This document shows positions 1-47,117 of a stretch of 64,000 bases of DNA, piece by piece. The notes beneath the pieces were generated by a model. It saw only the letters and a list, made by a program, of their open reading frames with translations. It was not told where the DNA came from and did no database searches. Within the stretch, counting starts at the first letter, position 1; each line of letters starts with the position of its first letter. A program made the position numbers and the translations under genes. The stretch comes from Blastocladiella emersonii ATCC 22665 (Eukaryota; Fungi; Blastocladiomycota). Location of the stretch: assembly GCA_025594325.1 (NCBI GenBank), contig JANHCV010000008.1, positions 868,001-932,000 of the forward strand. The letters run 5' to 3'.

Positions 1-2
1 AT

Positions 3-2940: not shown

Positions 2941-3023
2941 AGCATCGGAGTGGTTCGTGTGGGATGCCTAGAGCGAGAACGGGCGCGCGCGGTTCGCTGA
3001 CGCAACCGGGTCGCTTCCGAGCA

Positions 3024-3323: not shown

Positions 3324-3418
3324 GGCCGGCGTGACCCCGAGAGGCGCAATTATGAGGCTGATGAGGCGAGTCGCGGTCTCGCCACGCTCCCCGTCCTCCA
3401 TCCGTCGACCAAAACGCA

Positions 3419-21500: not shown

Positions 21501-21588
21501 TCACATGACGCGTCGCGAGGCGGCGCTCCCTTCTCCTCTTCAACACCGTCACCTCCCATGTAACTGCGCATGAACACTCAATGCAACT
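21501..21588 (+). promoter_or_regulatory. Example family 5' module (E-box plus ATGYAACT)
   Basis: tcacatga 21501-08, atgtaact 21558-65, atgcaact 21581-88; similar modules occur at most members. Confidence 0.55.
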
Positions 21589-23399
21589 TATCCTCAAGTC
21601 AAACATCAACACTATGGACTGAGTCGTGTGAGCGCGTCGCGAACTTTGCTCGAACTCGACTGGTTCCAGCTGACGAACTCGGCAGGGAGCAACTGCTTGC
21701 GTCTCTCACGCTCTGTTGCATGGAATCTCGACTTGCACTGATCCGAGAGACCGTCTCGCGTCGGATTTATCCGTTTCCCTTCCCCCCAGTCAACACCAAG
21801 CTCAAACCTACTCCAGTCCCCCTTGATGAGCTCGAGAGACTTTGCGCACTTGTGGAAGCGCATCGGACCAACAACCCTGCACAAGACAAGCAGGGCGGGT
21901 ATTCGCCTTCAAAGCCGCCCTCAAACTATTGTAGCCCGCTTGAGCCGGGCACAAAATCGCATTCTCGTTCCCAACCTTCCCCGCGCTCCCGGTCCTCCCG
22001 GCGCTCCCGTTCTCCCTCTCACGTCTCTTCGGGACGCAGCCTTCGCTCGAAAGACGCGAATCGAAGTCGTGCAGATTCGCGAGACCGCTCTCGACGGCGT
22101 TCACGTTTGCACTCACGGAACCGCTCTCGACGGCGTTCACGTTCGCGCTCGCAAGACCGCTCTCAACGGCGCTCACGTTCGCAAAATGTGTCCCAGCTTC
22201 GCTCACGCTCGCGTTCGCGTTCGCGAACTCTGACACGGAGGCGTTCCCGGTCACGCTCGCGACGCCCCGCATCCCCTGTTCGACACAATCGGCCCCTCCC
22301 TACAGGTTCGACAGTGCCTCACCTTAACCACGGTCAGTTCCTCTGCCTGTTTCGCATGGTGCGTGAATCGGGCTTGCAGTTCAAGCGGCAACGGGGCTTA
22401 CAACATAAACGACGACTAGAAGACTCTTCTCGCGTCATGGCAGACGCCAACGACTTTCTCGCACGCTTGCGCGCTATTGCCCCTGGTGCGCCGCTGGCTC
22501 ATCTTCTCACAGTGGCGTTCCGATCGGTCCCTCGTGCAATCTTCCACATTTACGGCCTGTTTCTGCGCGACACCGCCTCGGATGCGGAAGCCACACGGAT
22601 CTTTCTCGACGCGGTCGACCCGCGAACGTACACTCCCTGGCTTCGCCAGTGGCTCGACTTCATGCCTGAGCCCCGCGAAACGGTTGCGTCGTACTACGCC
22701 AAGTTTCGTGCGCTGCTTGTCGAGGGTTTACGCTTTGATGAGGCTCTCGCGATAGACCGGAACATCAAGCAAATCTTCGCGGCCAAGCTTTACTTTGGAC
22801 TCGGATACAATCCAGACGAGCTGTTCGACGGCCTCCTGGGCGACCCGCGCAAGTCGGTTGCAGACATGGCCGCTGCAACCGGCGACCTCGTGTTCCCCTC
22901 GATACTGCTGAACCCGCTTCCGTCTTGCATCAAAACGACCGCATTCCGGGAACGGCAAGAGCCAGCGTCGCCGCTACTCCCGCAGGCACACACTTCATCT
23001 GGCGAATCGTGTACTTTCTGCAACTACCTTGGGGAACCGCTCGAGATCGCCAGGTTGCACGCCACCGAGGACTGCCTTTCGCTCAAGCACCCGCGCGTGC
23101 TCGCGCAGCTCCTGGTCACGGGTATGAGCAGCCTCGGGCGCCTCCCATCCTGGCTCTTGCGCGCGTCCATGGATGACGTTGAGCTCGAGCGTGCGATCCG
23201 CGACTGCTTTCACGTCCTGTCGCACACCCCGATCCCGAACTCGGCCGTACTCGTGCAACGGGAATCGGTTCTTTGCGCTCAGCGTGCCTTCTCGGCCGTC
23301 CTCGCGCTGCCGCCTGACCTCATGAAGCGCGCGCTGCGCAACATGTGGCCGTGTCTCCAAGCGATTCAGCCTCAGGCTCGTGTTCGTGTCAAGCAGTGA
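21570..23399 (+). CDS. Gag-derived member 10 (intact, RS repeats)
   Basis: LCCMESRLALIRETV; RS repeats at about 21960-22270; core; IKQIFAAKLYFGLGYNP; CTFC-x12-H-x4-C. Confidence 0.85.
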   Translation: MNTQCNLSSSQTSTLWTESCERVANFARTRLVPADELGREQLLASLTLCCMESRLALIRETVSRRIYPFPFPPVNTKLKPTPVPLDELERLCALVEAHRTNNPAQDKQGGYSPSKPPSNYCSPLEPGTKSHSRSQPSPRSRSSRRSRSPSHVSSGRSLRSKDANRSRADSRDRSRRRSRLHSRNRSRRRSRSRSQDRSQRRSRSQNVSQLRSRSRSRSRTLTRRRSRSRSRRPASPVRHNRPLPTGSTVPHLNHGQFLCLFRMVRESGLQFKRQRGLQHKRRLEDSSRVMADANDFLARLRAIAPGAPLAHLLTVAFRSVPRAIFHIYGLFLRDTASDAEATRIFLDAVDPRTYTPWLRQWLDFMPEPRETVASYYAKFRALLVEGLRFDEALAIDRNIKQIFAAKLYFGLGYNPDELFDGLLGDPRKSVADMAAATGDLVFPSILLNPLPSCIKTTAFRERQEPASPLLPQAHTSSGESCTFCNYLGEPLEIARLHATEDCLSLKHPRVLAQLLVTGMSSLGRLPSWLLRASMDDVELERAIRDCFHVLSHTPIPNSAVLVQRESVLCAQRAFSAVLALPPDLMKRALRNMWPCLQAIQPQARVRVKQ

Positions 23400-23751: not shown

Positions 23752-24849
23752 ATGAAAACTCCATGTAATGATGATGGGCAACCAGCTTTATTGGCTGCTT
23801 GGCCTGATCCGCACGCCGTTGTTGCAACGTTTGTCCGAGCTCGCTTGGTCATGTCTGACCAGGCCCAGAAAGGCCGGCTCTTGCAAGCTATTATGTTATG
23901 CTCAATGGATCTTCGCGTAAAACAGATTCGCACAGCATCAGCAGAGCATATCGGTCTGGAAGCGTGCCCAGCCGAGACTGGTGGCGCTGAGCAGGAGGGG
24001 CGCGTTGGGTCGGTTTTGTTACACGAGCTCAATGCGCTCCGCCTCTTGATCGAGTCCCCGACGCTCAAAGCGCTTGCGGATGCCATATCTACCGATTCGA
24101 CTGTGTGCGAGCAGGCTCCTTCCCATGATGGTCAAGTTCTCACACAACCTCACTCATTGCATTGCGTGGAATCTCTGCCACCAAATGCTTTACTCGATAC
24201 ACGTCACCCCCGCGACACTTCGACTCAGCATCCGCTTTGGACACCATCGTCTTCTTCAGACACGCGCTCACGCACTCGTTCGCCTCCGCGATCCGCAGAA
24301 TCGCCGCGCCACTGATCGCGCTCACGCTTGCGGCCGCGATCCCGTTCCAGTCAGCCTTTTAGCGAGCTCTCGATTTCATGTACGAATAACATCCGGTCGC
24401 CGTCCCTTTCGCACTCCGACTTTCGTGCCATGTTCCAACGAGTTCGCGACTCCAGGGTCCAGCTTGTGACTCGCGCCGTACAGCGCGCAGAGCGGATCAC
24501 CGAGGGGCAAGCGTTCCTTCGGCGGCTTCGGAACGTCGCTGCGGGAGTCCCGCTCGCCCATCTCCTCTCAGCCGCCTACCAGAGCGTACCGCGGACATTA
24601 TACCACGTCTACGGCGTGTTTCTCCGCCAGACTATGTCTGACGCCAACGCCGAACGCGTTTTCTTGGAAGCCGCTGACCCACACATTCGGACCGATTGGC
24701 AGTGCCGCTGGCTCACGCTCTTACCCAAGCCAAACGAGCCGATCGCCACTCACTACGCCAAGTTCTGCGCTCTGCTTGCCGAGGTCGTGTCGGTCAATCT
24801 TGTGCTCAAACTTGATCAAAACATTAAGCAGCTCTTTGCGACGTCACTC
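23752..24849 (+). pseudogene. Gag-derived member 11, 5' half, split by the Gypsy insertion
   Basis: MKTPCN...MLCSMDLRVKQIR...core...IKQLFATSL; reads on in frame at 36947 as YFGLGYNP once the element and one TSD copy are removed. Confidence 0.9.
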
Positions 24850-25045
24850 TGAAGGCCCAGGGGACCGAGACTAGGAACGGCTCCATATAAGACTCGGTGT
24901 ATACTTCCGCCGTTAGGCTTCCCTGAGCAAATGGGGAGCGCGAGGGCAAATCGGAACAACAGCGAGGGGCGGGAGCGGCGGTGCCGCTGCACGCACTGTG
25001 CGTGTTGATTGAGGTCACTTGGCATCACCTGATCTGGTCGCAACA
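24850..25045 (-). repeat. 3' LTR (196 bp)
   Basis: Matches 31160-31225 joined to 36812-36941, with 5 substitutions by eye. Confidence 0.95.
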
Positions 25046-25057
25046 TCACCCCCCTCC
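25046..25057 (-). other. Polypurine tract
   Basis: GGAGGGGGGTGA directly before the TG of the 3' LTR. Confidence 0.85.
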
Positions 25058-25504
25058 AGCTTCGGCGTACCCGCTGCAGTGTGCTAGTCGGAGCGAAGAT
25101 CAGGCGAGTGGGTTGGTGACAGTGAGTGACCGGGTGCGGCGAGGGTGGTGGCTCAGCCGGCCGTGGCGCCGCCCGTGGCGCAGCCATGTTTCGTCCAGGG
25201 CCTTGGCCCGCTCCGTTCCGACCGCTCGCAGTGCGGGCGGGGACCGTCCCGCGTGCATGACGCGTTGCCGATGATCAGCGCACCGCTTGTCGCGGGTTGA
25301 GGTGTGCGTGCAGCACGTAGATCTTCAGGTTGCACTTGGCCAATGTCAGAGTGTGCGCATAGCATGGAGAGTTTGGGATTGCACTTGGCAAGTGGGGAGG
25401 GGAGCTCACTACGCTTGGCAGGAGATTCGGAGGCGAGGTGCACGTAGCAAAGAAGAGGGTAAATTCTGTACATCATGATACGTAATCCGCGCGCGGTGCC
25501 GTGG

Positions 25505-25837
25505 CTACCGCCGCTTCTTGGCCGGCGCCTTCTTCTGGTACTGCGCCGCCGAGGGGGCCGCAGCGCGTGCTGGTTGACGCCGCCCGCGCTGGCGCGGCCG
25601 CGGAGCTCCGGTTTCCCCCTGGGGCTCGCGCGTCTCGCGCGCGGCCTGCGCGCGCTGGTTCCAGTACGTCTTGATCGCCCCGCTGGTATCAAAATCGGTC
25701 GAGGGCTCCCACGAGTCTTCCAGCTTTGGGCTGGTCCACTTGACACGGTACTCGAGCACCGTACCGACGTAGCGATGGTTGAGGATCCGGCGGACCGCAA
25801 AGGACTGCTCCGTGATTGCCTCGCCCACCTCGATTAG
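25505..25837 (-). CDS. Integrase chromodomain tail, in frame after a TGA
   Basis: FAVRRILNHRYVGTVLEYRVKWTSPKLEDSWEPSTDF...YWN; same frame as pol. Confidence 0.85.
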   Translation of the reverse strand, partial: LIEVGEAITEQSFAVRRILNHRYVGTVLEYRVKWTSPKLEDSWEPSTDFDTSGAIKTYWNQRAQAARETREPQGETGAPRPRQRGRRQPARAAAPSAAQYQKKAPAKKRR

Positions 25838-28800
25838 TCAGAGGTAGTTCACGGGCACCTTCTCAACCAGCATGCCGGTCGCGTCGAGCAGCGTGTAGGC
25901 GCCGCCGCGGTTGCGCCGCACTACGCGGTACAGCCCCTCGAACCGCGGATCAGCCAATGAGGAACGGTCCGTGGTCAGGCACATGACCGTGGCGCCCGCG
26001 GGGAAGTCAAGCTCCTCGATCTTGTGGCGTTTGCAGAACGCCTCGAATGCTCGGGCAGCCAGCTTGGACGTGCGCTGCGCCATGGCGGGGAACACCACGT
26101 TGCGCATCAGGCCGAGTCGTGCCTGCTGCTTGACCTCGGTGAGTGGCCGCAGGGGCTTCTGCTCTGAGTAGTTGGCGAGCGGGTTCGACGGCCGCGCGAA
26201 CATGAGCGAGAACGGGGTCAACGAGTGGCGAGAGTGCGTCGAGTTGTTGTACACGAACTGGGCCATGGGGAGCGTCGACGGCCATGCCGCCAAGTTGCCC
26301 TTGATCGTCACGAGCAGCTTGGTTTTGATGGTGCGCACCAGTCGCTCAGCTGCACCGTTGCCCTGCGGGTGGTACGGCGAGATGAACCAGTGGTTGATGC
26401 CCGCCAGGCGCGTGAACTCGGCGAGGAGGTGGTTGGCAAACTCAGGACCATTGTCGGACTGGATGACGCGCGGGAACCCGTAGCCGAGGAAGATGTGCCA
26501 CAGGGCCTGCGCGATGTCGCTCGCCGTGATCGACTTGAGGGGCACGAGCCACGCGTAGCGCGTCGCGACGTCGATCACAAGGAGGATCTTGGAGAACCCG
26601 TTGGGCGACAGCGGCATGGTGGCGCAATTGATGGCAATGTGGTCGAGCGGGAACTCGGCCTTGACCAAGCGGGCCGGATGGAAACCGTGCGCCGCGATAG
26701 AGAAACGCTGGCAGTCCATGCAGTTGCGGGTGAGCTGGCGGCAGTCGCCAATGAGGCCAGGCCAGTTGTGGCCGTGCGCGTGCAGGTAGTTGCGCATGCC
26801 GGTCGCGCCCTGGTGGCACGCCGCGTGCGCCTGCTCAAGTAGGCCGGCGCGCTCGCCCTTGGGCGTCTCCTTGTCGGGCACGAGCTCGGCAGGATTGACG
26901 GCCACGACTGGACTCGCAGTGGTGGCAGCCTCCGCGGCACGCGCCTTGGCTGCCCGCGTCATCGCGGCCATGACTGCGTGGGTCGCAATCGCTTTCGCTA
27001 CGGCCTGGCGCGGCGGGCGCGACTGGAACACGAGATGGGCCGCGTGCTGCGGTTCGCTCCCATTGGTGCCGCCCTGCGGCAGGGTTGGGCGGAGCGGGTA
27101 CTTGCCTTTGGTGCACTCGTCGGCGCGGTACAGGTCCTGGAGCGTGGCGTGCGCGACGAACACACCATCCCGCACCTCACCCCCCTCCAGGTCGTTGGTC
27201 GGCCGAAAATTTTCGCGGGATGGAGTGGAGGATGAGGACGCAGGCTCGACGTCGCCCGCGTAGCCAAGCGCGTGCAGCCGCGAGAGGCAGTCGGGCATGG
27301 CGTTGCGGATGCCGGGGATGTACGCGATCTCGAAGTCGAGCGAGGTGAGGGTGTCGAGCCAGTTGGTGTAGATCGGCGGGAGCGCCTTCTGGGTGAGGAG
27401 GAACTGCAGCGCCTGGTGGTCCGTGAACAACGTGAAGCGACGGCCGGCAACGTAGTAGTAGAGGCGGGTCATGGCGAACACAATGCCGAGGAGCTCACGC
27501 TTGGTCGCCAAGTAGTTGCGCTTGGCCGCACGCAGCGCACGCGACGCGAACACGATGTAGCGCGGGTTCTTGGGCGAGCCCTGGAATAGCACAGCGCCGA
27601 GACCCGAGGCCAACGCGTTCGTGGCCACAAAGAACGGCTGCGAGAAGTTGGGCTTAGCGAGGCACGGCGCGTTCTCGACGGCGAGCTTGAGCGCGTCGAA
27701 GGCCTTCTGGCACGCTGGCGTCCACACCGCTGGGTTACGGGTGTCAATCACTGGCGTGTTGCGCAGCGCGTTGAGCGGCTCCATGATGGTCGCGGCGAGC
27801 GGGATGTAGGGGCGCAGGTAGTTGACAAGACCAAGGAACTGCTGCACCTGCTTGCCCGTGGTGGGGATGGACCAGTTGCGGATCTGCACAACCTTGGCCG
27901 GCGCCGGGCGCACGCCCTTGGCGGACACGACGTGGCCCAGCAGGTGCACGCGCTGGTAGAAGAAGTGGCACTTGCGCGGCTGCAGGCGGAGACCAAACTC
28001 GGTGAGCCGCTCCAGCGCCATGGCGACGTGGCGGCCGTGCTCCTCGACCATGTTTGAGAAGATGACAATGTCGTCAACGAACACGCGCACAAACGGCATG
28101 TCCTTGAAGATGTCAGTCATGACGGCCTGGAAGTGCGAGGACAGCGTCTTGAGGCCGAACGGCCCGCGGCGGAACTGGTACTGGATGTTCTCCCATGTGA
28201 ACGTGAGGATGTGGCTATCTTCGGGCGCGACCATGAACTGGTGGAACGACGCGCACAGGTCGAGCGTCGAGTAGACGAAAGCGCCCGCGACGATCTCAAA
28301 GATGGCGTCAATGAGCGGGATCGGGCGCTTGTCAGGCTCAAGCACCTCGTTGACGTGGCGCAGGTCGAGGCAGATGCGCAGGCCGGTGACCTTGCCGTCA
28401 ACGTCCTGCTTCTCAACGCTCAGGAGCGAGCTGTTCCAGTCGGACTTGCGGACGCAGCGTTCAATGACGCCGTGGCGGAGCCAGTCGGTGACAGCCTCGC
28501 CAAACGCCTGCAGGTTGGCCTGCGGTACGCGATACTGCGCGTGGTACTGGCGGTACTTGTCGGGGTTCTTGGCGAGTGACATGTTGATCTTGACGTGGAT
28601 CACCAAGTCCGGGTGTTTGCAGAAGGACTCAGGCAAGAGCGCCGCGTTGGCAGCAAGCGCATCTCGCATCCGCTGCGGCCAGTGCTCGGGCGGGACAAGC
28701 GGCTTGTCGTCCTTGGAGATGGGCGGGTCGCGCTTGTTGTTGGGCGCGGGCACCAACTTGTATGCGGGATCCGACGGGATGACGCCGCCAATGTAGATGC

Positions 28801-31072
28801 CGATCTGCGAGAGCACGTCGCGGCCGAGCAGCGGCACCTGGTTCGGGCTGTGCATGACGCGGAACTTGTGCGCGAGCTTGCGCTGGTTGGCGGACATGAC
28901 GCAGTCGAGGTGACCAATGCGCACGACCGCGCCGCCAATGCCCGTGATGGTCTTGTGCGCGCCGTAGACGTGCGGTGCGAGATGCTGCAGCGCCGAGTAT
29001 GGGAGGATTGAGACGTCGGCGCCTGTATTGATCATGGCGGAGATGACAAGCGGCGCCCCATTGGGACTCTTTTGCGAGACAAGAGAGATTGGGATCATGG
29101 GTTTTTCGTTTATTTTGGCGGAGGAATCTGCTACGTAGCAGGCAAAAGAGGGAACCGTGGGACACGACTCAACCTTGGTCAACTCGAGCTCCATCTGGTA
29201 GTTGTTGGCTGTGGCCATGACTTGGTCGCTACGCAAACACGAGGCGAGGATGGAATCACCCTGCGCGGAGGCAGTGGTGAGTGAACCGTGGTTTCCACAA
29301 GCGAGAGGATGGCTGCATAGGCCCAAGGGATCCGTTGGATCAAGAAGAGAAGGCGTACCCATATGCGGTCGGTTTGACAGCGCACCCGCGTGAGGTGCGC
29401 CGGCCAAGAAGAGGGTCTGCGGCACCAGCTGGACGCACTGCAGGTAGAGCACAATGACCCGCGTTGGCAGGGCCATGATGGCGGCGAGGAACTGGGTGGC
29501 GAGCGTGGCCATGTTGCCCTCGTCCTGCATCATGTCAAGCAGCTTGCCGATGAACTCCATGGCGGTCTGGTTGTCCTTGATCTCGGGCTGCACCAGCGGC
29601 GGGTGGCCCCGCAGCGTCGCGTACTTGATGGCCATGCGGATTGTGGACACGGCGAACTTGGGGCCGGGCAGCGTGAGGTTGTGGCAGTAACGCAGGGAGT
29701 GCGAGCGGGCGGTCTTGCCGTGGATTGACGTGGGAGCTGCGTAGCAGTACGCGCACGGCGTCCCCTCCATCTGCGTCTCGCACCCCTCGTTGACCAGTAG
29801 GCGCGACATTGAGGCAAGGAACTTGCGGACCTTGATGCCCGGGCGGTTGGGCAACTGCTGCTGCTGCTGCGGGTGCTGGTACGCGAACTGCTGCGGTGGC
29901 ATCTGCTGCTGCGGGAACAGCACGAACCCGCCAACCTGCGCCTGCTGCGGGAAATACTGCTGCTGCATGATGGGGACCGCGTACGGCATGGGCTGCTGAT
30001 AGTAGACCTGGCCGCCCTGCATCGGCAGCATCTCGGCCGAGTTGACCTGGAACGACTGCGGCGGCGCCTGCACCATGGGCGGCGGGGCCAAGCCATTTGG
30101 GCGGCCGTACGGCACAAACAGGTTCTGGTTCTTGTTGGGGCGCAGGCGCGGGGCGCCTTGGTGGTGGTTGCCGCTGCCACTGCCCCCCGAGGGGACCGTC
30201 ACGGCCTGCGGCTTGGCGGGCAGGTTGTTGTTGGACTGCTTCTTAGCCATGGCGGGGATTGAGAGGGTGTGGGACGCCACCTCCTTGATCATGTCCTTGA
30301 ACACCGTGTGCTGGTCGCCTGCCATGCGGTTGATCTTGACAAGGTCCTCATTGTGCAGGCCGAGCAGCTTGTGCACAAACATGGTCTTGATGAGGGGCTG
30401 GTTTCTGAGCACGGCCCAGTTGTTGTTGGCCGAGAGCGCGGCCACGAAGCGGTCGGCGGCGGCCTGGACCGTCTCGCGGTTGTACACCAGAATGTCAATG
30501 ATGGGCTGGTGGTGGATGTGGTAGTTGGGCGACTGCGTGGCGCGGAAGAACAGGTCCGTGGCGGCCTCGGTCGACATGCCCGGCTTGAGGCCCTTGTTGA
30601 TGCGGTTCCAGACCTTGGGCGAGAACAGTGACTGCAGGTGCGGGAGCGCTGCGGCGAAGGACAGGTACGACGCCTTGGACTTGACCGTCTCGAGCCACAC
30701 CTGGGGGTCACGGTGGGTGTCGGGGCGGTCCTCGATGCCATACGTTGGCAGGTTGGGGAGCATGCGCTTGAGGGCCTTGATCGACAATGACAACAGCGTC
30801 AGGGCGTCGTGACCCTTGAGGCGGTCCTTGGCGTGCTTGAGGACGCGCTTGTACATCTCGTTGTCGTTGGTCAGCTTGTTGAGCTCCTTCTTGAGGGTGA
30901 TCTTCTCCTTGGGCGTTGTTTCCGGGCGCAGCGCCTTGGCCTGGTTCTGCACGATCTCGTCGGCAATGAACATGAGCTTGTTGCCGAGCGCCAAAATCAG
31001 CTCCTCAAGCTCGAGGTACGCGGTTGGCAGCTTGGTGGTCGCGAGGTACGTCTTGAGGGGGTCGTTGGACAT
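25838..31072 (-). CDS. Gag-Pol polyprotein (single frame; several catalytic residues mutated)
   Basis: PR MINTGADVS; RT LRICLDLRHVN, FHQF, PFGLKT, FVDDIVIFS; RH VATNALASGLGAVL, FTLFTDHQAL; IN H-H-C-C, IQSDNGPEF, YHPQGNGAAER, FEGLYRV. Confidence 0.95.
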   Translation of the reverse strand: MSNDPLKTYLATTKLPTAYLELEELILALGNKLMFIADEIVQNQAKALRPETTPKEKITLKKELNKLTNDNEMYKRVLKHAKDRLKGHDALTLLSLSIKALKRMLPNLPTYGIEDRPDTHRDPQVWLETVKSKASYLSFAAALPHLQSLFSPKVWNRINKGLKPGMSTEAATDLFFRATQSPNYHIHHQPIIDILVYNRETVQAAADRFVAALSANNNWAVLRNQPLIKTMFVHKLLGLHNEDLVKINRMAGDQHTVFKDMIKEVASHTLSIPAMAKKQSNNNLPAKPQAVTVPSGGSGSGNHHQGAPRLRPNKNQNLFVPYGRPNGLAPPPMVQAPPQSFQVNSAEMLPMQGGQVYYQQPMPYAVPIMQQQYFPQQAQVGGFVLFPQQQMPPQQFAYQHPQQQQQLPNRPGIKVRKFLASMSRLLVNEGCETQMEGTPCAYCYAAPTSIHGKTARSHSLRYCHNLTLPGPKFAVSTIRMAIKYATLRGHPPLVQPEIKDNQTAMEFIGKLLDMMQDEGNMATLATQFLAAIMALPTRVIVLYLQCVQLVPQTLFLAGAPHAGALSNRPHMGTPSLLDPTDPLGLCSHPLACGNHGSLTTASAQGDSILASCLRSDQVMATANNYQMELELTKVESCPTVPSFACYVADSSAKINEKPMIPISLVSQKSPNGAPLVISAMINTGADVSILPYSALQHLAPHVYGAHKTITGIGGAVVRIGHLDCVMSANQRKLAHKFRVMHSPNQVPLLGRDVLSQIGIYIGGVIPSDPAYKLVPAPNNKRDPPISKDDKPLVPPEHWPQRMRDALAANAALLPESFCKHPDLVIHVKINMSLAKNPDKYRQYHAQYRVPQANLQAFGEAVTDWLRHGVIERCVRKSDWNSSLLSVEKQDVDGKVTGLRICLDLRHVNEVLEPDKRPIPLIDAIFEIVAGAFVYSTLDLCASFHQFMVAPEDSHILTFTWENIQYQFRRGPFGLKTLSSHFQAVMTDIFKDMPFVRVFVDDIVIFSNMVEEHGRHVAMALERLTEFGLRLQPRKCHFFYQRVHLLGHVVSAKGVRPAPAKVVQIRNWSIPTTGKQVQQFLGLVNYLRPYIPLAATIMEPLNALRNTPVIDTRNPAVWTPACQKAFDALKLAVENAPCLAKPNFSQPFFVATNALASGLGAVLFQGSPKNPRYIVFASRALRAAKRNYLATKRELLGIVFAMTRLYYYVAGRRFTLFTDHQALQFLLTQKALPPIYTNWLDTLTSLDFEIAYIPGIRNAMPDCLSRLHALGYAGDVEPASSSSTPSRENFRPTNDLEGGEVRDGVFVAHATLQDLYRADECTKGKYPLRPTLPQGGTNGSEPQHAAHLVFQSRPPRQAVAKAIATHAVMAAMTRAAKARAAEAATTASPVVAVNPAELVPDKETPKGERAGLLEQAHAACHQGATGMRNYLHAHGHNWPGLIGDCRQLTRNCMDCQRFSIAAHGFHPARLVKAEFPLDHIAINCATMPLSPNGFSKILLVIDVATRYAWLVPLKSITASDIAQALWHIFLGYGFPRVIQSDNGPEFANHLLAEFTRLAGINHWFISPYHPQGNGAAERLVRTIKTKLLVTIKGNLAAWPSTLPMAQFVYNNSTHSRHSLTPFSLMFARPSNPLANYSEQKPLRPLTEVKQQARLGLMRNVVFPAMAQRTSKLAARAFEAFCKRHKIEELDFPAGATVMCLTTDRSSLADPRFEGLYRVVRRNRGGAYTLLDATGMLVEKVPVNYL

Positions 31073-31140
31073 GGTGTGGTGGTGCCAAGGTTGAGCGCAA
31101 GCGAGAGAGAGAGTGTGTGTGTGTTTGCTCGGGAAGGCAG

Positions 31141-31159
31141 GGAGGTCTATACGGAAAAA
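31141..31159 (-). other. Candidate self-priming PBS
   Basis: No TGG tRNA-type PBS. TTTTTCCGTATAGAC follows the LTR and can pair with GTCTTATACGGA in the LTR (one bulge). Confidence 0.5.
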
Positions 31160-31225
31160 TGAAGGCCCAGGGGACCGAGACTAGGAACGGCTCCGTATAA
31201 GACTCGGTGTATACTTCCGCCGTTA
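31160..31225 (-). repeat. 5' LTR, element-internal 66 bp
   Basis: Matches 24850-24915 (one substitution); ends at the TA target of the Tc1. Confidence 0.95.
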
Positions 31226-31525
31226 CAGCCATTTTCAGAAGAGACAGGACTGGAGCAAAGCAAGCCGCAAGGCTTGCAAGCGCAACAGCAAGCGCGTGCT
31301 TGCGGCTTGCGCACAGGGCCGACGCAACTTGCAAGCAAGGGTTTGCGCGCTGCAGAGCGTGGGAAGGGTTCGGAAAAATAAGGTCAGCAGGGTCGCTCCC
31401 TGGCTCACAGCGCGCGGAGGGAGCGGCTCCGACTCGGGCCTCTCCTCTCTCGTCACCTCTCCCCCCCTCTTTGACTCTCCCCTCTCCCCCCTCCCCGACC
31501 GCGACTCGCCAAAACAACCTGCACC

Positions 31526-32700
31526 ATGAATCAACCCATAAAAAAAACATACAGTCCCGAGCTCAAAAAGTTGTGTGTGAAAGCGGTCATTGAGAAGGGC
31601 ATGTCCATCAAGGAGGCCTGCCACTACTATGAGGTCACGCGTTCGCCGGTCTACGCGTGGATCGCCGAGTACCGCGCAAGCGGCGCCATCATCGCCAAGA
31701 AGCGCACGGGTCGCACGCGCACGCTCACCGCTGAGGACGAAGCAGTGCGTTTGCCTTGGGGCCGGCTCGCACGGGTCCCGGTTCGCTTAACACGAGTCGC
31801 GATGTTGTCTTGTAGGCTCTCGTAGGCATTTACGAGGAGCAGCCCATGAACTACCTCCGCAAGGCGGCGCTTGCGCTTGCCGAGCTGACAGAGAAGGTGG
31901 TCTTGGTCACAACGGTATGGCGCGCCCTTGATCAGAACAACATCACGTATAAGAAGGTAACCGTATTGCCCTCGCGATGGGTCTGCCTGCAAGCAGCCAG
32001 TACTCACGCAACCCCTCGTGCGAGTAGGCCAAGTACCGCCACCCAAAGCGCGACGAGGATGCCCAACTCATCTGGCGCCTACTCTTCGACCGCCGCTTCA
32101 AGGCGAACCAGTGCGTGTTCACTGACGAGACGGGCGTTGACGCCGAGGCCGCGCGGCGGCGGTGCGGGTGGGCGCGCAGTGGTGTAGATCTTGAGACTAC
32201 CGCGCATCCAGGCACGGTGCGGCGCCACTACAACTTCGTCGCCTCAATTGACATTGACGGGTTCCTGACGTGCTCCGAGACCAAGACGTCCGTCAACCGC
32301 ATCATGTTCTGGGATATTGTGCGCACCACGATTGTACGTTCCCGTTTGTGCCGCCACGCGCGCAAGTAGCTCACCGCTGCGCATGTAGGCCCCAATGATG
32401 AACCGGTTCCCTGGCCCGCGGTCCGTGCTCGTGCTCGACAACGCGTCGATCCACAAGTCGCCCGAAAATATCGAGCGGATCGAGCAGGACTTTGGGATCG
32501 TCGTCGTGTTCCTCCCGCCCTACTCGCCCGACTTCAACCCTATTGAAGAGGCTTTCGGTATCTTCAAGAACGGCCTCCGCCGTGAGCCCTTGGTCGGGCC
32601 GGCTCGCGACGCAGGGGACCTGCTCTCCGCTCGCCTCCTTGGGTGTGTGAGCCCTGATGTCGCGCGCAAGCTCTACTGGAAGGCTGGACTTGAGTCGTAA
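31526..32700 (+). CDS. DD35E transposase, 4 exons
   Basis: HTH MSIKEACHYYEVTRSPVYAW; VFTDETG; VLDNASIH; LPPYSPDFNPIEE. Phase-0 GT-AG introns 31745-31815, 31957-32027 and 32334-32388 give a continuous frame. Confidence 0.9.
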
Positions 32701-33012
32701 CCTCCTTGCCTTCGATATACGATGTCTCTTCCGCGATCTATTCTACCTTGACTCTCTCCGCTCGCTCGCCCGGGTCGCCGATTTGGACGACGAAAGCTGA
32801 TCAAAGTCGCGTCACATGATATCGAAACGCGTCTCGTCTGGTGCGAGACACACTGACATTGAGGTCGAACCACCCCGGGACGGAAGCAAGGATATGAAAA
32901 CAGGATATTGAATACAACCAGCAAAGCGATCGACGGAAACGCGGAACAAAAACGCGGCAAACAGCGAATCGAACTGGATCCGCGCAACAACAAACCAAAC
33001 TCGCCTGCACCT

Positions 33013-34934
33013 TCACTCGTCGCGCCGCGGGACGAAGGCGAGGTTGTTGTCGCGGCACCACTTCGTGTAGTCCACCACGGTCATCTCGCCCGTCATGTAG
33101 CGGTCGTACTTGACGCGGTGCTCCTGCGCCATCATGACGTCGTAGTCCGCTACCAGGACCTCCTCGTCCTCAAGTTCGCGGGCGCCAAACTCGAGCGCAT
33201 CGGCCTCAACCAGGCTCGACGCGGCCGCCTCCTCGGCCAGCTGCGAGCGCAGGCGGAACCACACCGCCTCGTCATCAAGCGACGCGGCGGAGCGGCGGAG
33301 CAGCTTCGCCTCGCTCCTCATCCGCTCCGTCGGCAAGTCCTCGGACAAGGACAGGTGCGAGCGTTTGCTGCCAGGCCACAGCGGGCTCGGCATCCCCGGC
33401 TGACCGGCGGAGCTCGGCGAGGAGACGGCGAGGGTAGCCGAGTACTGGTTCCCGAGCGACGTCACGGGCGTTGGCGGGTACGGGTACGCAGGCGGCGGCG
33501 GGCGGGCGTCGTGGCCGCCGTGGTGCGGGTGCGGGTACGACGCGGGCGGCGCGCGGGCCTCATGGCCGTGGTGCGGGTACGGGGCCGACGCGGGCGGCGC
33601 GCGGGCGTCGCGGCCGTGGAGCGTGTATGGGGCCGACGCGGGCGGCGCGTGGGCGTCATGGCCGTGGTGCGGGTACGGGGCCGACGCGGGCGGCGGGCGG
33701 GCGTCGTGGCCGTGGTGCGGGACCGAGGGCTCGGCGCGGGCGGCGCGCGGGCGTCGCGGCCGTGGTGCGTGGGCAGGTACGGCGCGGATGCGTCATGGCC
33801 GTGGTACACGCGCGCGGCCGACGGCGTACGCTCGTCGCGGTCGTGGTGCGCGGGCGGGTACGGCGCGGGTGCGTCATGGCCGTGGTACACGCGCGCGGCC
33901 GACGGCGTACGCTCGTCGCGGCCGTGGTGCGGAGTCAAGTGCGCGAACGGCGTACGCTCGCCGCCGCCGTGGTGCGCGAGCGGGTACGACGCAGGCGGCG
34001 GGCGCGCGTCATGACCGTGGTGCGGAGTCAAGTGCGCGAACGGCGTACGCTCGCCGCCGCCGTGGTGCGCGAGCGGGTACGACGCAGGCGGCGGGCGCGC
34101 GTCATGACCGTGGTGCGGAGTCGAGTGCGCGAACGGCGTACGCTCGTCGCTGCCGCGGTGCGGGGTCGAGTACGCAGGCGGAGGCGGGCGGGCGTCGTGG
34201 CCGCCGTGGTGCGCGAGCGGGTACGACGCAGGCGGCGGGCGCGCGTCATGGCCGTGGTGCGGAGTTGAGTGCGCGAACGGCGTACGCTCGTTGCGGCCGT
34301 GGTGCGGGTACGAGGCGGGCGGCGGGCGCACGTCGTGAACGTGGTGCAGGTACGGGGCCGACGCGGGCGGCGGGCGGGCGTCGTGGCCGTGGTGCGGGAC
34401 CGAGGGCTCGGCCGGGTTGAAGGTGTACGCCGGGACGGGCGAGTACGGCGGGGGCGCAGGGCGCTCGTCGCGCGACAGCGGCGCGGGCGGGAAGGGCGTC
34501 AGGCCGGGGCGGTAGTCGTGCACAGCGCCCGCGTCGTGTTGGTTCGCGCCGCCAAAGGCGGAGCTTAGAGGCAGCGGGCCCGAGCGCGGGGTCCCGTCAC
34601 TGGCGGGACGGCCGAACGCCGTTGGCGGCGCCGTGGACCAGGACGGCGCGGACGGCGGATACCGACCGAGCTCGCTGCGGCCTGCGTCAGCCCCAGTGGC
34701 TGAAACACCGGCCGGGCGCGACGCGTGACGCGTCGAGCTCGCGGCCGCCGCCACAGCCGCCGCCACAGCCGCCGCCGCCGACGAGCTTGCCGCCGCGGCC
34801 GCGGCCACCGCCGCCGTCGAGGTGCGGCCGGCGCCGGGACGCGCAAACGGCACCGGGGGGAATGCGGAACCCTGCGCCGTGGCCTTGCCGATGATCCAGT
34901 CGAGCGTCAGGTGCTCGCTGCGCTTCGTGTCCAT
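33013..34934 (-). pseudogene. Tc1 cargo 1: His/Pro repeat protein, one frameshift near 33735
   Basis: MDTKRSEHLTLDWIIGK...(HHGHDARPPPASYP)n, then an acidic C-terminal domain ending KWCRDNNLAFVPRRDE. Confidence 0.6.
33470..34400 (-). repeat. Coding tandem repeats (93-bp core unit plus variants)
   Basis: cgtggtgcgcgagcgggtacgacgc at about 33968, 34061 and 34205; 31-aa unit HHGHDARPPPASYPLAHHGGGERTPFAHLTP. Confidence 0.85.
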
Positions 34935-34952
34935 GCAGAAGCTGCGAGCGAT

Positions 34953-36424
34953 TCAAATGACGTCGATGTAGCGCAGCGGCACGTGCATGTCCTCGGCGTT
35001 GCCGCCGATGAACAGGCAGTACCTGCCATTCTTCTCGCACTCGATGCAGCGGTGCGGCTGCCCCTTGAGCAGCTCCCTGGCGACCGACACGTACTTGGAC
35101 ACCTCCGACTCCTCGGCCGTGAGCACCATGTCACCCTACTTCACGTCGATGGGCGGCAGACCTGCAATGGTGGTGAGCGCGATGGTGATGCGGGAGTCCA
35201 CCACGCCCGACCCCAGAACCACGGACTCGAAGCGGAGTCGGCGAAAAACGACGAGCTGGGCGAGCTTGAACGAGGCCGTGTTGTGGATGTAGTCGTTGAG
35301 CACCTGGATCATGATGACCTCGGCCCACCGATCGCCGAGCATCGAGCGGGCAATCTCCTGCATCGTATGCTTAAAGTCGTCGTAGCACACGAAGATGGAC
35401 GAGGACACCTCAAACGTGTTGGAGATCTGCTCGGCGTCCTTGTCGGGCAGGATGGTGATGTCAAACTTGAGGAGGCGGTGCACGACGCCCGTGAGCACGC
35501 CCGCGTTGCGGTACCCGTTCTCAGGGTCTTCTTGGTCTTGGACGGGAGGAGCGGGGGGAGCGGGAGGGGCGTCGTTGTCGCGCGCCCGAGCGGGAACAAG
35601 GAACCACGCGGTGGATGCAACGGCGGTTGGCGTAGCGGCGGTCGGGGCCGGAACGGGGGTCGTGGCCGTGGCTGGCGCAGATGCGCTCGTGGCCGTAGCC
35701 GTACCCACGCGGGACGACTGGCGCGAGATGTAGGTGTTGGTGTCGATGATGCCGGTTCCCTTGCTGTGGGCGGGGACGTGGTCGTTAGCATCAGCGCACA
35801 CTGCGTGTGGGAGAGGCAGGTCAACGTACTTAACAGCTTCAAACCGACCATGACACTCGAGGCAGAAGCGCAGCCTCAGGTGCGTACCGCCAGCGACAAG
35901 AGCGCGCGCGGCGTCGCTAGCCATCCACGCGAACGCCGGCATCCACAGCACCGAGTCCTTGAGGAAGGCCTGGCGCGCCGCATTCTTGTCGTTGGACAGG
36001 TTGCTGTGCGCGAAGCCGTACTCTACGTGCGAGGGACAAGGGCAGGTCAGTTCGAGGTTCTTGACGCGACGCAGAGCCCTTGCGTCGCCGTACCCCTGTG
36101 GAGATGGCAATTCTTTGTGCGAGGCGCGGTGCACGTGAAGCTGGCGCAGTTCTCCTGGCCGTCCGCGGGGTCAATGTGGCCGAAGCAGACCCTGCAGTGA
36201 AGGCAGCTTTGGGCCGAGACGGTGGCCACAGGGACGTGACCCCTCCCTCGTCTTGCGCGCGGTGACGTGATGCTGCTCGAAGTCGGACGCGGTGATCTGG
36301 CGGGCGGCAGACTCGCGCGCGCAACGGACCACGACGGCGCCGTTGATGGCCACGGCCTCGGCGTTGTTGTTGGTGCCCACCATGAGGACGACCGAACGAG
36401 GTGAGGGAGAGGGGGCGACAACAC
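34953..36424 (-). pseudogene. Tc1 cargo 2: Cys-rich protein of unknown family; start uncertain
   Basis: CLHC, CPCPSH, CLECH and CIEC motifs. In-frame TAG at 35136, then GDMVLTAEE...HRCIECEKNGRYC...IDVI to a stop at 34953. Confidence 0.55.
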
Positions 36425-36811
36425 TACGGGCCTCGCGCGGGTTTTGTACGGTTGGCGGCGGCCCGATTGATCCCGCCCGAGCGTCTCGCTCTCGTTCTTG
36501 CACTCACTCCCTTGACTTTGGCTCTCGTGACTGTATCCTCATGGGGCTGGAGCATCATCTCGCTCGCTCACATGGCCTCAAGTCGCGAGGAAAACGTCAA
36601 GGGAGAGAGAGGATCTCGCTTCAGTCGCACTCAGGTCTCTTGCCTCGTCGGGTTATTTTTCCGAGCCTCTGCAGGCGCAAGGCGGGGCGCCGCAACGCGC
36701 AAGCAAGCCGCCTGCAACCAGGCTGTTGCTGCAGCTTGCTTGCGCGCGCGCAAAGCGCAACCGCAAGCAAAACCCTTGCGCCGTGTCCTGTCTCTTCTGA
36801 AAATGGCTGTA

Positions 36812-36941
36812 GGCTTCCCCAAGCAAATGGGGAGCGCGAGGGCAAATCGGAACAACAGCGAGGGGCGGGAGCGGCGGTGCCGCTGCACGCACTGAGCGTG
36901 TTGATTGAGGTCACTTGGCGTCACCTGATCTGGTCGCAACA
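36812..36941 (-). repeat. 5' LTR, outer 130 bp
   Basis: Matches 24916-25045 and ends in caaca. Confidence 0.95.
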
Positions 36942-37563
36942 CGCTCTACTTTGGACTTGGGTACAACCCGCCCATCATCTTTGCCATGCTCTCAGATCCG
37001 GCGAAGTTGATGGCTGACATGGTGGCTGCCGCCGCAGACGTTCTCGTTCCATTGCGGCTCTTGAACCCAGTTCCCTGGAACGGGCTTTTGGGGTCTATTG
37101 GGAAGCTCGCTGAGCGTTCCACTCCCTCCAGCAGATCCACGCCTCGCAGCGAAGCATCACGCACGGCGTGCGCGTTCTGCACGCGGATCGGTGAGCCGTG
37201 TGAAACGGCCGTTTCGCACTTTGCAGAGGCCTGTCTGTCGCTCAAGAACTCGCGCGTCCTCGCGCAAATCCTTGTCACTTCCCTGGACGCAATCCAAGCT
37301 CCTCTGCCCGGACACATGGACGCATGGACGCGCGAACAAGCGACGCGGAGTTTGAAGCGGCCGTACGGCAGTCTTATGAAGCGCTTGCCCACTCGCCGGT
37401 TCCGCGTTGTGCGACTGTGTTTCAGCAGAATTCGATCGGATGCACTTGTTGCGCATTCGAAGCTATCCTTTTGCTTGACCCGACACTTAGGGTGCGAGTT
37501 TTGCGCGAGGTGCAAGTGCAAGTCGGCAAGGTTGGCCCTGTCCCAAAGGCGAGGACTCGTTGA
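36942..37563 (+). pseudogene. Gag-derived member 11, 3' half
   Basis: LYFGLGYNPPIIFAMLSDPAKLMADM...CAFC-x12-H-x4-C; an 8-bp duplication at 37315-37330 shifts the frame before the tail. Confidence 0.9.
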
Positions 37564-39538: not shown

Positions 39539-40261
39539 TTGGAACGCATGCGGACGAATCGTGCGGCCATTACGGGGGGAAGGTTGACCGCACAGCAGGA
39601 GGAATATATTGGTTTGAAGCGCCCATTTCATGGCTTTTCGCCAGAATCGAGTCTGGAACACTTCAATAAAGCAGCCGCGAGAGATCGAGCATATTCCAGC
39701 GGTACCACTGAGAACCGTGAAGACGAATAGTGGGCAAGAGAACGACTGGGTTAGACGCTAAGTGGCATACGCGAGCAAGGTTGATGCGCGACTTGAGAGC
39801 GAGTACGACAGCGTCACGTATCTCCACACAGTGCGATGGTTTCCGTGAGGCTAGTCGTAAAGGAGCGCGAGGTTGTCGTCGTCAAGCAGCAGCGCAAATT
39901 CCAAGTTGGTGCAGCAAACGGATTGCGTACGAGGAACTCTGGGCCTCGACTGATCGGCGATTCCAATACCACCGGAAGATGCGGCTCGGGTTGTCCCCTC
40001 AAGCACGGAAGCGAGGACAGCTCGCCAGCAAGCGCGCGGCCACGTCGCGCGGACGTCCGTTCGTTGCGTGGCGGACGAGCACGGCAATCCACAGCTCAGG
40101 TGAGAGATTCACGCGATTCATCGGTTGCATCAAGTCTCACGCCGTAGTTGCATCACTTTCGGCGGGGCGTGGAGAGGGAGCGAAGCGAGCGCTCTCATCC
40201 ATTGCGTGACGCGGCGCCAATCGCGTTGCGCCGGCCATCATCACTGTCTCACCTTGAACTC

Positions 40262-46856: not shown

Positions 46857-47117
46857 TAGAGCGAGTTGTTGACAAGTTGCCGCAGCAACAGTTCATGTGA
46901 GCCGCGTGTGCAATGGTGAGTGTTTTAGTCACGGCTGTCCAAGGTTAATTAGATCGTGAAGCCGCAAGCTACACTATCAAAACGGGTTGCATCAGGCACA
47001 CAGGGAGAATGGACCAGCAGCGCCGTTCGCAGCAGAGTGGCGCAACGCGTTCCTACGAGTGGCCGCCGCCCGCGCAACGGCCGCTCCCCGCTCAATACAC
47101 ATGTCTCGCCCCCTGCT

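What the first reader, a model, noticed from the sequence alone, without database searches (positions are those of the whole stretch)
29420..31072. The Gag of the resident Gypsy element aligns with the array genes
Gypsy RDPQVWLETVK...GLKPGMSTEAATDLFFRAT versus array TDPRKFLAALR...LRPTLSDTEAEHAFHCA. Gypsy ETVQAAADRFVAAL...IKTMFVHKLLGL versus ETVASYYAKFRALL...IKQIFAAKLYFGL. Both carry CxYC/CxFC-long loop-H-x4-C followed by a similar helical tail (FLAAIMALP versus AFSAVLALP). A likely donor lineage and its derivatives sit in one locus.
Basis: partly seen in the sequence, partly recalled or inferred. Interest (0 to 1): 0.85.

Follow-up and report, generated by a model that had tools for sequence, protein, structure and literature searches.

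The report
Gypsy Gag related to tandem gene family
The capsid (Gag) part of a young Gypsy retrotransposon in the water mould Blastocladiella emersonii is a distant relative of a large, undescribed, species-specific family of tandemly repeated genes, so this family looks like a new case of retrotransposon capsid genes kept and multiplied by a fungal genome.

Summary
Window 29420-31072 (- strand) encodes Gag residues 1-551 of an intact 1,744-aa Gag-Pol ORF of a Ty3/Gypsy element.

- **Homology.** A 42-member profile of the array family scores the Gypsy ORF at 43.3 bits (E 2e-12 among 1,406 local ORFs; background at most 10.8 bits). hhalign gives 94% probability. Seventy other Gypsy polyproteins reach at most 13.6 bits.
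- **Array origin.** The array core also aligns with canonical Retrotrans_gag Gags (hhalign 92%). Array and Gypsy share an unusual C-x2-C-x10-25-H-x4-C knuckle.
- **Limits.** Pairwise BLAST is not significant. The "helical tail" is not significant on its own.
- **Family.** It is found only in Blastocladiella emersonii. At least 56 ORFs lie in about 210 kb sampled along 1 Mb of one contig. They lack LTRs and pol, and dN/dS is 0.2-0.5.

The resident copy is a young insertion (LTRs about 97.5% identical) that split an array gene and later took a Tc1/mariner insertion. It is therefore not the donor. The direction of descent and the meaning of co-location remain unresolved. Function is only inferred; Gag-decoy restriction is my best guess.

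The parts
24850..36941 (-). Complete Ty3/Gypsy LTR retrotransposon, including a nested 5.6-kb DNA transposon. It is inserted antisense into an array gene. The 5-bp target duplication is CACTC / CGCTC, with one mismatch.
   Evidence: The LTR pair and flanks were read. The LTR starts TG and ends CA. A polypurine tract, GAGGGGGGTGA, lies next to the 3' LTR.
24850..25045 (-). 3' LTR (196 bp).
   Evidence: blastn self-comparison.
31160..31225 (-). 5' LTR, inner 66 bp (98.5% identical to the 3' LTR).
36810..36941 (-). 5' LTR, outer 132 bp (97.0% identical). It is separated from the inner part by the nested transposon, with a 2-bp TA overlap.
25838..31072 (-). Uninterrupted Gag-Pol ORF of 1,744 aa. 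Pfam domains: protease aa 656-761, RT 895-1048, RNase H 1117-1243, integrase 1404-1609.
30263..30715 (-). Gag aa 120-270: the capsid-like helical core, homologous to the array core.
29684..29755 (-). Gag aa 440-463: the expanded-loop zinc knuckle, C-x2-C-x14-H-x4-C.
29438..29665 (-). Gag aa 470-545: the post-knuckle helical tail (ends ...FLAAIMALP). It is collinear with the array tail but not significant on its own.
31226..36809 (+). Nested Tc1/mariner-like DNA transposon in the 5' LTR. Terminal inverted repeats are CAGCCATTT / AAATGGCTG, with a TA duplication. The transposase is broken: HTH at 31526-31825 and DDE_3 at 32395-32700 lie in different frames.
23752..24849 (+). 5' part of the array gene split by the Gypsy insertion. 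It is a paralogue of 21570-23399 (about 45% identity) and ends ...IKQLFATSL. There is an in-frame stop in its upstream RS-rich part.
36942..37560 (+). 3' part of the same split array gene. It resumes YFGLGYNP... and carries the CAFC...H...C knuckle.
66..1637 (+). Array gene, full core.
2041..2940 (-). Array-family ORF on the opposite strand: N-terminal part and core only.
3419..5035 (+). Array gene.
10879..12192 (+). Array gene.
12725..14270 (+). Array gene in two overlapping frames (12725-13612 and 13440-14270), apparently frameshifted.
15435..17423 (+). Array gene with a roughly 250-aa Arg/Ser repeat between the core and the knuckle.
17880..19448 (+). Array gene.
19688..21199 (+). Array gene.
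21570..23399 (+). Array gene.
40148..41098 (+). Truncated array gene, core only. It is the source of TDPRKFLAALR.
42749..44302 (+). Array gene.
45441..46856 (+). Array gene. NCBI model P0076 starts at an internal Met, position 45948.
46956..49321 (+). Array gene without a knuckle (46956-48614), followed by array-family fragments (48434-49321).
60841..61731 (+). Truncated array gene, core only.
62089..63525 (+). Array gene whose 3' end runs into a 682-bp repeat that starts at 63319.

Best explanation
**What the interval is (shown).** It is the gag part of a structurally complete, young Ty3/Gypsy retrotransposon of Blastocladiella emersonii. The window is JANHCV010000008.1:868001-932000.

**What is shared (shown).** The element's Gag and the surrounding tandem genes descend from one Gag ancestor. 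They share three parts in the same order:
- a Retrotrans_gag-type capsid core of about 150 aa;
- a CCHC knuckle whose Cys-to-His loop has grown from 4 to 10-25 residues;
- a helical C-terminal region.

**What the array genes are (shown).** They have no protease, RT, integrase or LTRs. They carry an N-terminal module of their own (M-x4-T-x-C-N ... LLxxMNLRLxLIRxALxxR, then a Pro/Ser/Arg-rich linker). They lie head to tail. Their coding sequence is under purifying selection.

**How they arose (inferred).** A gag of this Gypsy lineage, or of its ancestor, was immobilised, gained the N-terminal module, and was multiplied by tandem duplication over about 1 Mb of one chromosome. The resident element is a much later insertion of a surviving relative. 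It happened to land in, and break, one array gene.

**What they do (inference only).** The array proteins keep the capsid-assembly core and a nucleic-acid-binding knuckle, often next to Arg/Ser-rich stretches. They would therefore bind or co-assemble with Gag of the related elements and disturb particle assembly. That is a decoy-type restriction, as with Ty1 p22 or mouse Fv1. A large, fast-diverging tandem family would fit that role.
For: **Element anatomy.**

**Homology of Gag and array.**
- HMMER 22.5 bits with 15 sequences, rising to 43.3 bits with 42 sequences (E 1.6e-15).
- Rank 50 of 1,406 local ORFs, with background at most 10.8 bits.
- hhalign 59.2, probability 93.9%, against a shuffle maximum of 19.1; probability 93.6%.

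**Specificity.** The 70 other Gypsy polyproteins score at most 13.6 bits by HMMER and at most 21.3 by hhalign.

**Array core is a capsid domain.**
- The profile aligns to P0032 residues 54-152. Pfam places Retrotrans_gag at 53-140 there, and the array's CxxC falls on that protein's zf-CCHC at 234-250.
- Against 7 PF03732-type Gags, hhalign scores 52.0, probability 92.4%, with a column-shuffle maximum of 20.
- 15 of the 20 best weak hits fall in Gag regions.
- The AF2 core model has pLDDT 95.8. 24 of its top 50 Foldseek PDB hits are retroviral capsids.

**Shared odd knuckle.**

**No LTR or pol around array genes.**

**Selection.** dN/dS is 0.32-0.51 over whole genes and 0.20-0.50 in the core.

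**Distribution.** 24 library clusters, all B. emersonii and all on one 1.8-Mb contig. 56 family ORFs lie in about 210 kb.

**The insertion is younger than the array.** LTR divergence is about 2.5%, against paralogue dS of at least 0.35.
Against: - The direction of descent is not shown. The Gag sits on a 2.9-substitution branch with no supported position, and the AU test is indecisive.
- No second copy of this Gag was found anywhere, so only a single sequence stands for the Gypsy side.
- The array profile did not retrieve any Gag-Pol from 1.84 billion proteins at E <= 0.001.
- No array member reaches Pfam's threshold for Retrotrans_gag.
- No single Foldseek match is significant; the best E is 0.94.
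- The tail similarity is not significant alone.
- The N-terminal modules do not match.
- No orthologues in other species were found, so a formal criterion for co-option is unmet.
- Purifying selection also acts on gag of mobile elements.
- There is no expression or functional evidence. The restriction mechanism is a guess by analogy.
Confidence: 0.6

Rival explanations
1. Reverse direction. The array is an older host family, itself of ancient Gag origin. The Gypsy lineage replaced its own gag by recombination with an array transcript or gene, so the element is the recipient and not the donor.
For: - The best tree places the Gag inside an (unsupported) group of 18 array rows rather than outside the family.
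- The nearest Pol relatives, at 37% identity, have Gags with no detectable similarity to the resident Gag. A swapped gag would produce exactly this.
Against: - That placement has no starred support, and array monophyly is not rejected (p = 0.32).
- The Gag is at most 20% identical to any array member, and its branch is far longer than any array branch. This speaks against a recent capture.
- The Gag lacks the array-specific N-terminal module.
- Gag divergence beyond recognition at 37% Pol identity is ordinary for LTR elements (established knowledge).
Confidence: 0.12
2. The 'array genes' are not host genes. They are gag-only remnants or non-autonomous relatives of retroelements piled up in a transposon-rich, perhaps pericentromeric, region. 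Their conservation reflects selection on mobility, or simply recent origin.
For: - The region is rich in mobile DNA: Gypsy, Tc1/mariner, a 682-bp repeat, and PIF1-like and Herpes_ori_bp-like helicase ORFs in neighbouring loci.
- Several copies are truncated, frameshifted or interrupted.
- The family is confined to one species and one contig.
Against: - No LTR-like direct repeats flank any unit.
- There are no pol remnants beside them.
- Units lie head to tail on one strand with short spacers. This is the pattern of tandem duplication, not of insertion.
- Paralogues are old (dS 0.35-1.7), yet most ORFs of 440-660 aa are intact and have dN/dS of 0.2-0.5.
- A conserved, family-specific N-terminal module with a conserved start motif is present.
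Confidence: 0.15
3. The resemblance is chance, or comes from composition in a GC-rich genome.
For: - Pairwise BLAST and phmmer are not significant.
- The tail alone is not significant.
Against: - The profile score lies 15 or more standard deviations above shuffles.
- The score doubled when the family profile was enlarged.
- Among 1,406 six-frame ORFs of the same GC-rich DNA, the best non-family score is 10.8 bits, against 43.3 for the Gag.
- Two separate segments align in the same order.
Confidence: 0.01

Closest known systems
Co-opted LTR-retrotransposon gag gene families: Arc/dArc, PNMA, RTL/SIRH, the SCAN domain, and Crtg1-14 of Wang & Han 2021 (PMC8321522)
   Same: - A Gag capsid domain is kept without protease, RT or integrase.
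- There are no LTRs.
- The coding sequence is under purifying selection.
- Some known families are duplicated: PNMA, RTL and SCAN, and Crtg9 is tandemly duplicated.
   Different: - According to that survey, the three fungal cases derive from Ty1/Copia and Bel-Pao, not from Ty3/Gypsy.
- This family is limited to one species in the libraries searched, so cross-species orthology is not met.
- The copy number and tandem density are far higher, at least 56 ORFs in about 210 kb.
- It has its own N-terminal module and an expanded-loop knuckle.
- A live relative of the putative source element is still in the genome.
Gag-derived restriction factors: Ty1 p22 (PMC4599808), mouse Fv1, sheep enJS56A1
   Same: They are Gag or capsid fragments encoded in the host genome alongside related active elements. 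They are proposed to act by binding or poisoning capsid assembly. This likeness concerns how the array may work, not membership.
   Different: - p22 is made from the element's own internal transcript.
- Fv1 and enJS56A1 are single genes.
- No interference, interaction or expression has been tested for the array, and no positive-selection test was made.
Ty3/Gypsy (Metaviridae) Gag with Pfam Retrotrans_gag (PF03732), Ty3_capsid (PF19259) and zf-CCHC (PF00098)
   Same: - Capsid core followed by a Cys-His knuckle, in the same order.
- Profile-profile match to PF03732-bearing Gags (probability 92%).
- The core model draws retroviral capsids as its commonest Foldseek hits.
   Different: - Neither the resident Gag nor any array member reaches Pfam's thresholds.
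- The knuckle spacing is C-x2-C-x10-25-H-x4-C instead of C-x2-C-x4-H-x4-C.
- A helical domain of about 80-100 aa follows the knuckle.

Membership tests
Ty3/Gypsy LTR retrotransposon (the resident element) | Direct LTRs that begin TG and end CA, flanked by a short target-site duplication. | tested here: met
   The 196-bp LTRs lie at 24850-25045 and at 31160-31225 plus 36810-36941. They are 97-98.5% identical and run TG...CA. The 5-bp flanks are CACTC / CGCTC, with one mismatch.
Ty3/Gypsy LTR retrotransposon (the resident element) | Pol domain order: protease, RT, RNase H, integrase. | tested here: met
   Pfam gives RVP at 656-761, RVT_1 at 895-1048, RT_RNaseH at 1117-1243, Integrase_H2C2 at 1404-1457 and rve at 1490-1569. 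The nearest relatives are chromodomain-bearing Gypsy polyproteins at 37% identity.
Ty3/Gypsy LTR retrotransposon (the resident element) | Gag with a canonical C-x2-C-x4-H-x4-C zinc knuckle. | tested here: not met
   There is no canonical knuckle anywhere in the polyprotein. A variant, C-x2-C-x14-H-x4-C, lies at aa 440-463.
Pfam PF03732 Retrotrans_gag (array core and resident Gag core) | Score above Pfam's gathering threshold. | tested here: not met
   Nine proteins gave no hit at E <= 1. Of 36 cores, one matched PF03732 at E 0.022 and one matched PNMA at E 0.027, both below threshold.
Pfam PF03732 Retrotrans_gag (array core and resident Gag core) | Remote homology to bona fide members by profile comparison. 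| tested here: met
   The array profile against 7 PF03732-bearing Gags gives hhalign 52.0, probability 92.4%, P 5e-7; column shuffles give 10.9 +/- 2.1, max 20. The HMMER alignment to P0032 coincides with its PF03732 and zf-CCHC segments. The resident Gag alone against that profile is weak (26.0, P 0.009).
Retroviral/retrotransposon capsid (CA) fold | Significant structural match of a confident model to solved CA structures. | tested here: inconclusive
   The core model has pLDDT 95.8. The best Foldseek E is 0.94, so no single hit is significant. However, 24 of the top 50 PDB hits are HIV-1/2, HTLV-1, BLV or HML2 capsids. The best local fit is the HIV-1 CA C-terminal domain (TM 0.54, 4.3 A over 83 columns). 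The whole-protein model gave nothing.
Co-opted (domesticated) gag gene | Loss of the other element parts (LTRs, pol). | tested here: met
Co-opted (domesticated) gag gene | Purifying selection on the coding sequence. | tested here: met
   Pairwise dN/dS is 0.32-0.51 over ten pairs, and 0.20-0.50 in the capsid core. This does not exclude selection on a mobile element.
Co-opted (domesticated) gag gene | Orthologues kept in other species at syntenic sites. | tested here: not met
   The exhaustive profile search of 1.84 billion proteins found family members only in B. emersonii; one other hit was a repeat protein. Unannotated genomes of relatives could not be searched.
Co-opted (domesticated) gag gene | Expression as a host gene. 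| not testable with these tools
   No transcript data are held here. The genome paper reports 23,370 ESTs that could be mapped (PMC9730499).
Gag-decoy restriction factor (Fv1 / Ty1 p22 type) | Binds or co-assembles with the target element's Gag and lowers its transposition. | not testable with these tools
   This is inference from the retained capsid core and knuckle only.

The most novel reading that the evidence does not exclude
Blastocladiella emersonii keeps an immune-like arsenal of 50 to more than 100 fast-diverging, tandemly duplicated Gag-decoy genes. They descend from the same Gypsy lineage that is still active in its genome, and they restrict that lineage by poisoning capsid assembly. 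This would be the first Ty3/Gypsy gag co-option reported in fungi. It would also be a case where decoys and target can be studied side by side in a culturable organism.
Probability: 0.2. Interest if true: 0.8.

Novelty: new member of a known kind. Interest (0 to 1): 0.6.

Why it matters
Capsid genes of retroelements have been reused by hosts for synaptic RNA transfer, placentation and virus restriction. Almost all known cases are in animals. A survey of 2,011 eukaryotes found only three in fungi, none of them from Ty3/Gypsy (PMC8321522).

Here an early-diverging, culturable fungus carries a very large tandem family of Gag-like genes. The family has no Pfam family and is not discussed in the genome paper (one search found no mention of gag, LTRs or transposons). 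A related Gypsy element with an uninterrupted Gag-Pol ORF sits in the same genome. That pairing makes two questions directly testable: how a gag becomes a host gene, and whether such genes act against their own relatives.

There is also a practical point. Current gene models for the family are truncated or fused, so the family is under-counted in the public proteome.

Tried and rejected
1. Word-indexed protein searches with the Gag region (aa 90-560) and with one array protein found nothing. This was probably because low-complexity words filled the candidate list.
2. I looked for Gag relatives among the N-terminal parts of the 70 nearest Pol relatives and found none. A profile of the Gypsy side could therefore not be built.
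3. An exact-sequence look-up of the Gag-Pol ORF found nothing on record.
4. A tblastn and LTR search of seven further array loci (about 146 kb) found no other copy and no solo LTR.
5. A metagenome scan with the Gag found no relative.
6. A search of PDB sequences with the array profile found no hit.
7. Foldseek with the whole 327-aa array model, against PDB and against viral structures, gave nothing usable. Two retroviral Gag hits appeared at E 2.2 only.
8. The array's N-terminal module showed no similarity to the Gag N-terminus.
9. A tree to place the Gag gave an unresolved position, and the AU test was indecisive.
10. I considered and rejected the idea that the 66-nt repeat alone was the LTR. 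The LTR is 196 bp and is split by a nested transposon.
11. I considered and rejected co-location as evidence of donor status. See the interpretation verdict.
Full report
**What is at the coordinates.**
- Window 25838-31072 (- strand) is one uninterrupted ORF of 1,744 aa. Its Pfam domains run protease, reverse transcriptase, RNase H, integrase, which is the Ty3/Gypsy order.
- The finding's interval 29420-31072 is Gag residues 1-551. Gag has no Pfam match.
- The window has about 62% G+C. It carries many long + strand ORFs that are 20-45% identical to one another; these are the 'array genes'.
The array strings, however, come from four different genes, at 40724, 15957, 22677/22764 and 23286.

**Where the window comes from.**
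- An exhaustive profile search of 1.84 billion proteins with the array core found 25 proteins. The 20 looked up were 19 hypothetical proteins of Blastocladiella emersonii ATCC 22665, all on the 1.8-Mb contig JANHCV010000008.1, and one unrelated repeat protein.
- Three of them are 100% identical to window ORFs.
- One fetched locus overlaps window 1-4392 exactly, which places the window at 868001-932000 of that contig.
- The genome paper for this strain does not mention transposons or gag.

**Is the resemblance real?**
- Pairwise searches say no. BLASTP's best E is 0.13 and phmmer's is 0.017, both against only 19 sequences.
- Profiles say yes.
  - A 14- to 15-member array profile against the single Gag gives hhalign probability 65-69% over 143-161 collinear columns.
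  - The score is 41.6 against 13.2 +/- 1.9 (max 19.5) for 200 shuffles, and against a maximum of 21.3 for 70 real Gypsy polyproteins.
  - HMMER gives 22.5 bits, E 3e-9, as one domain covering both the core and the knuckle.
- I then fetched seven more loci along the contig and collected 42 family members. With that profile the resident ORF scores 43.3 bits, E 1.6e-15. The match covers profile positions 6-292 of 309 and polyprotein residues 122-541.
- Among all 1,406 six-frame ORFs of the window and loci it ranks 50th, among family fragments. The best non-family ORF scores 10.8 bits.
- hhalign rises to 59.2, probability 93.9%, with a shuffle maximum of 19.1. The session's own hhalign tool gives 93.6%.
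- A score that doubles as the family profile deepens is what true homology predicts.
- Taken apart, the three segments differ in strength:
  - the capsid-like core (Gag 120-270) is strong;
  - knuckle plus tail is moderate (24.0 against 11.6 +/- 1.9; HMMER E 1.7e-5);
  - the tail alone is not significant, though its best match falls where expected.
- The array's conserved N-terminal module has no counterpart in Gag.

**What the shared domain is.**
- The enlarged array profile also finds weak matches in other Gypsy polyproteins. 15 of the 20 best lie in their Gag parts.
- The best is P0032, at 13.6 bits. Array profile positions 34-135 align to its residues 54-152, where Pfam places Retrotrans_gag (53-140). 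The array's CxxC falls on its zf-CCHC at 234-250.
- Against a small profile of seven PF03732-bearing Gags, the array profile gives hhalign 52.0, probability 92.4%. Column shuffles give 10.9 +/- 2.1, max 20.
- An AlphaFold model of the array core is very confident (pLDDT 95.8, eight helices of at least four residues).
- No Foldseek match is significant by itself; the best E is 0.94. But 24 of the top 50 PDB hits are retroviral capsids, and the closest local fit is the HIV-1 capsid C-terminal domain (TM 0.54).
- The knuckle is atypical, and atypical in the same way on both sides. It is C-x2-C-x10-25-H-x4-C (mode 12) in 32 of 42 array members, and C-x2-C-x14-H-x4-C in the Gag. The polyprotein has no canonical knuckle.
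- So the array proteins are capsid-plus-knuckle proteins of Gag origin, and the resident Gag is the nearest Gag that could be compared.

**Anatomy of the element, and what it says about 'donor'.**
- The LTR is 196 bp. The 3' copy is 24850-25045.
- The 5' copy is split into 31160-31225 and 36810-36941 by a 5.6-kb Tc1/mariner-like transposon. That transposon has 9-bp terminal inverted repeats, a TA duplication and a broken transposase.
- The LTRs are about 97.5% identical. A polypurine tract adjoins the 3' LTR.
- The element lies inside an array gene. The gene's frame runs ...IKQLFATSL up to 24849 and resumes YFGLGYNP... at 36942. Removing the 5-bp duplication restores the family motif.
- The closest sampled array paralogues already differ by dS of at least 0.35. 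The insertion is therefore far younger than the array. This copy is a late arrival, not the ancestor.
- About half of the pre-insertion window is array coding sequence, so landing in an array gene needs no special explanation locally.
- No further copy or solo LTR was found in seven other array loci.

**Are the array units genes or element relics?**
- They lie head to tail on one strand. They have no flanking direct repeats and no pol remnants.
- Most ORFs of 440-660 aa are intact despite old divergence.
- dN/dS is 0.32-0.51 overall and 0.20-0.50 in the capsid core.
- They share a family-specific N-terminal module with a conserved start motif.
- Several are truncated, frameshifted or interrupted.
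- This favours a tandemly duplicating host family with turnover over a pile of dead elements. However, expression and cross-species conservation are untested or unmet.

**Direction of descent.**
- In a tree of the core, the Gag sits on a branch of 2.9 substitutions per site with no supported place.
- Holding the array together as one clade costs only 0.95 log-likelihood units (AU p = 0.32).
- The data therefore allow either reading: the Gag as sister to the whole array (donor lineage), or less likely a capture of an array gene by the element.

**Comparison with what is known.** The nearest known kind is the co-opted gag gene family (Arc, PNMA, RTL, SCAN, Crtg1-14). In the survey of Wang & Han (PMC8321522), the three fungal cases derive from Copia and Bel-Pao. 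This family differs from the known cases in five ways:
- it is of Gypsy origin in a fungus;
- it is very large and densely tandem;
- it has an expanded-loop knuckle and its own N-terminal module;
- it is restricted to one species in the libraries searched;
- it coexists with an intact relative of its putative source.

**Mechanism.** Decoy-type restriction, as for Ty1 p22 (PMC4599808) or Fv1, is an inference from the retained assembly and nucleic-acid-binding parts. It has not been tested.

**Verdict.** The family is a new member of a known kind and is of moderate to high interest.

Noticed in passing
window 31226-36809: A Tc1/mariner-like DNA transposon is nested in the Gypsy 5' LTR. Its terminal inverted repeats are CAGCCATTT / AAATGGCTG, with a TA duplication. 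HTH (31526-31825) and DDE_3 (32395-32700) lie in different frames, so the transposase is broken. At 5.6 kb it is unusually long. It also holds 48-nt tandem repeats (33460-34404) that code a His/Pro-rich 490-aa ORF on the - strand.
   Followed up: partly
window 59266-59946, 63319-64000 and 42215-42496: A 682-bp inverted repeat pair is 99.85% identical; the second copy is cut by the window end. A third copy of 295 bp is 93% identical. This is an unidentified mobile element. It overlaps the 3' end of array gene 62089-63525.
   Followed up: no
window 38321-39538: A 405-aa ORF between array clusters has a weak FNIP-repeat match (E 8e-5) and a leucine-rich-repeat-like sequence. It is not part of the family.
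   Followed up: no
window 16356-16987 (in gene 15435-17423) and the N-terminal part of gene 21570-23399: Long Arg/Ser dipeptide repeat expansions lie inside array genes, at different positions in different paralogues. They could be nucleic-acid-binding or phosphorylation-regulated stretches.
   Followed up: no
window 45441-46856, 13440-14270; loci L002, L003, L006, L007: Public gene models of the family are truncated or fused. P0076 starts at an internal Met (45948), although the ORF and the conserved N-terminal motif start at 45441. P0071 joins three family stretches through predicted introns. Several models do not translate colinearly from the DNA.
   Followed up: partly
contig JANHCV010000008.1, 186 kb to 1.18 Mb (loci L001-L007): Family members lie on the + strand of the contig from 186 kb to about 1.0 Mb, and on the - strand at 1.12-1.18 Mb. 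The clusters therefore converge on a point near 1.0-1.1 Mb. Neighbouring loci carry PIF1-like and Herpes_ori_bp-like helicase ORFs, possibly Helitron-type elements.
   Followed up: no
N-termini of array genes, e.g. window 21570, 62089, 12725: A conserved start motif, M-x4-T-x-C-N, is followed by a helix LLxxMNLRLxLIRxALxxR. This module is absent from the Gypsy Gag. Its role (lipidation site, oligomerisation) is unknown.
   Followed up: partly
window 25046-25837: About 790 nt lie between the pol stop codon and the polypurine tract and 3' LTR. They include a 215-aa ORF on the element's strand (25153-25800). It was not examined.
   Followed up: no
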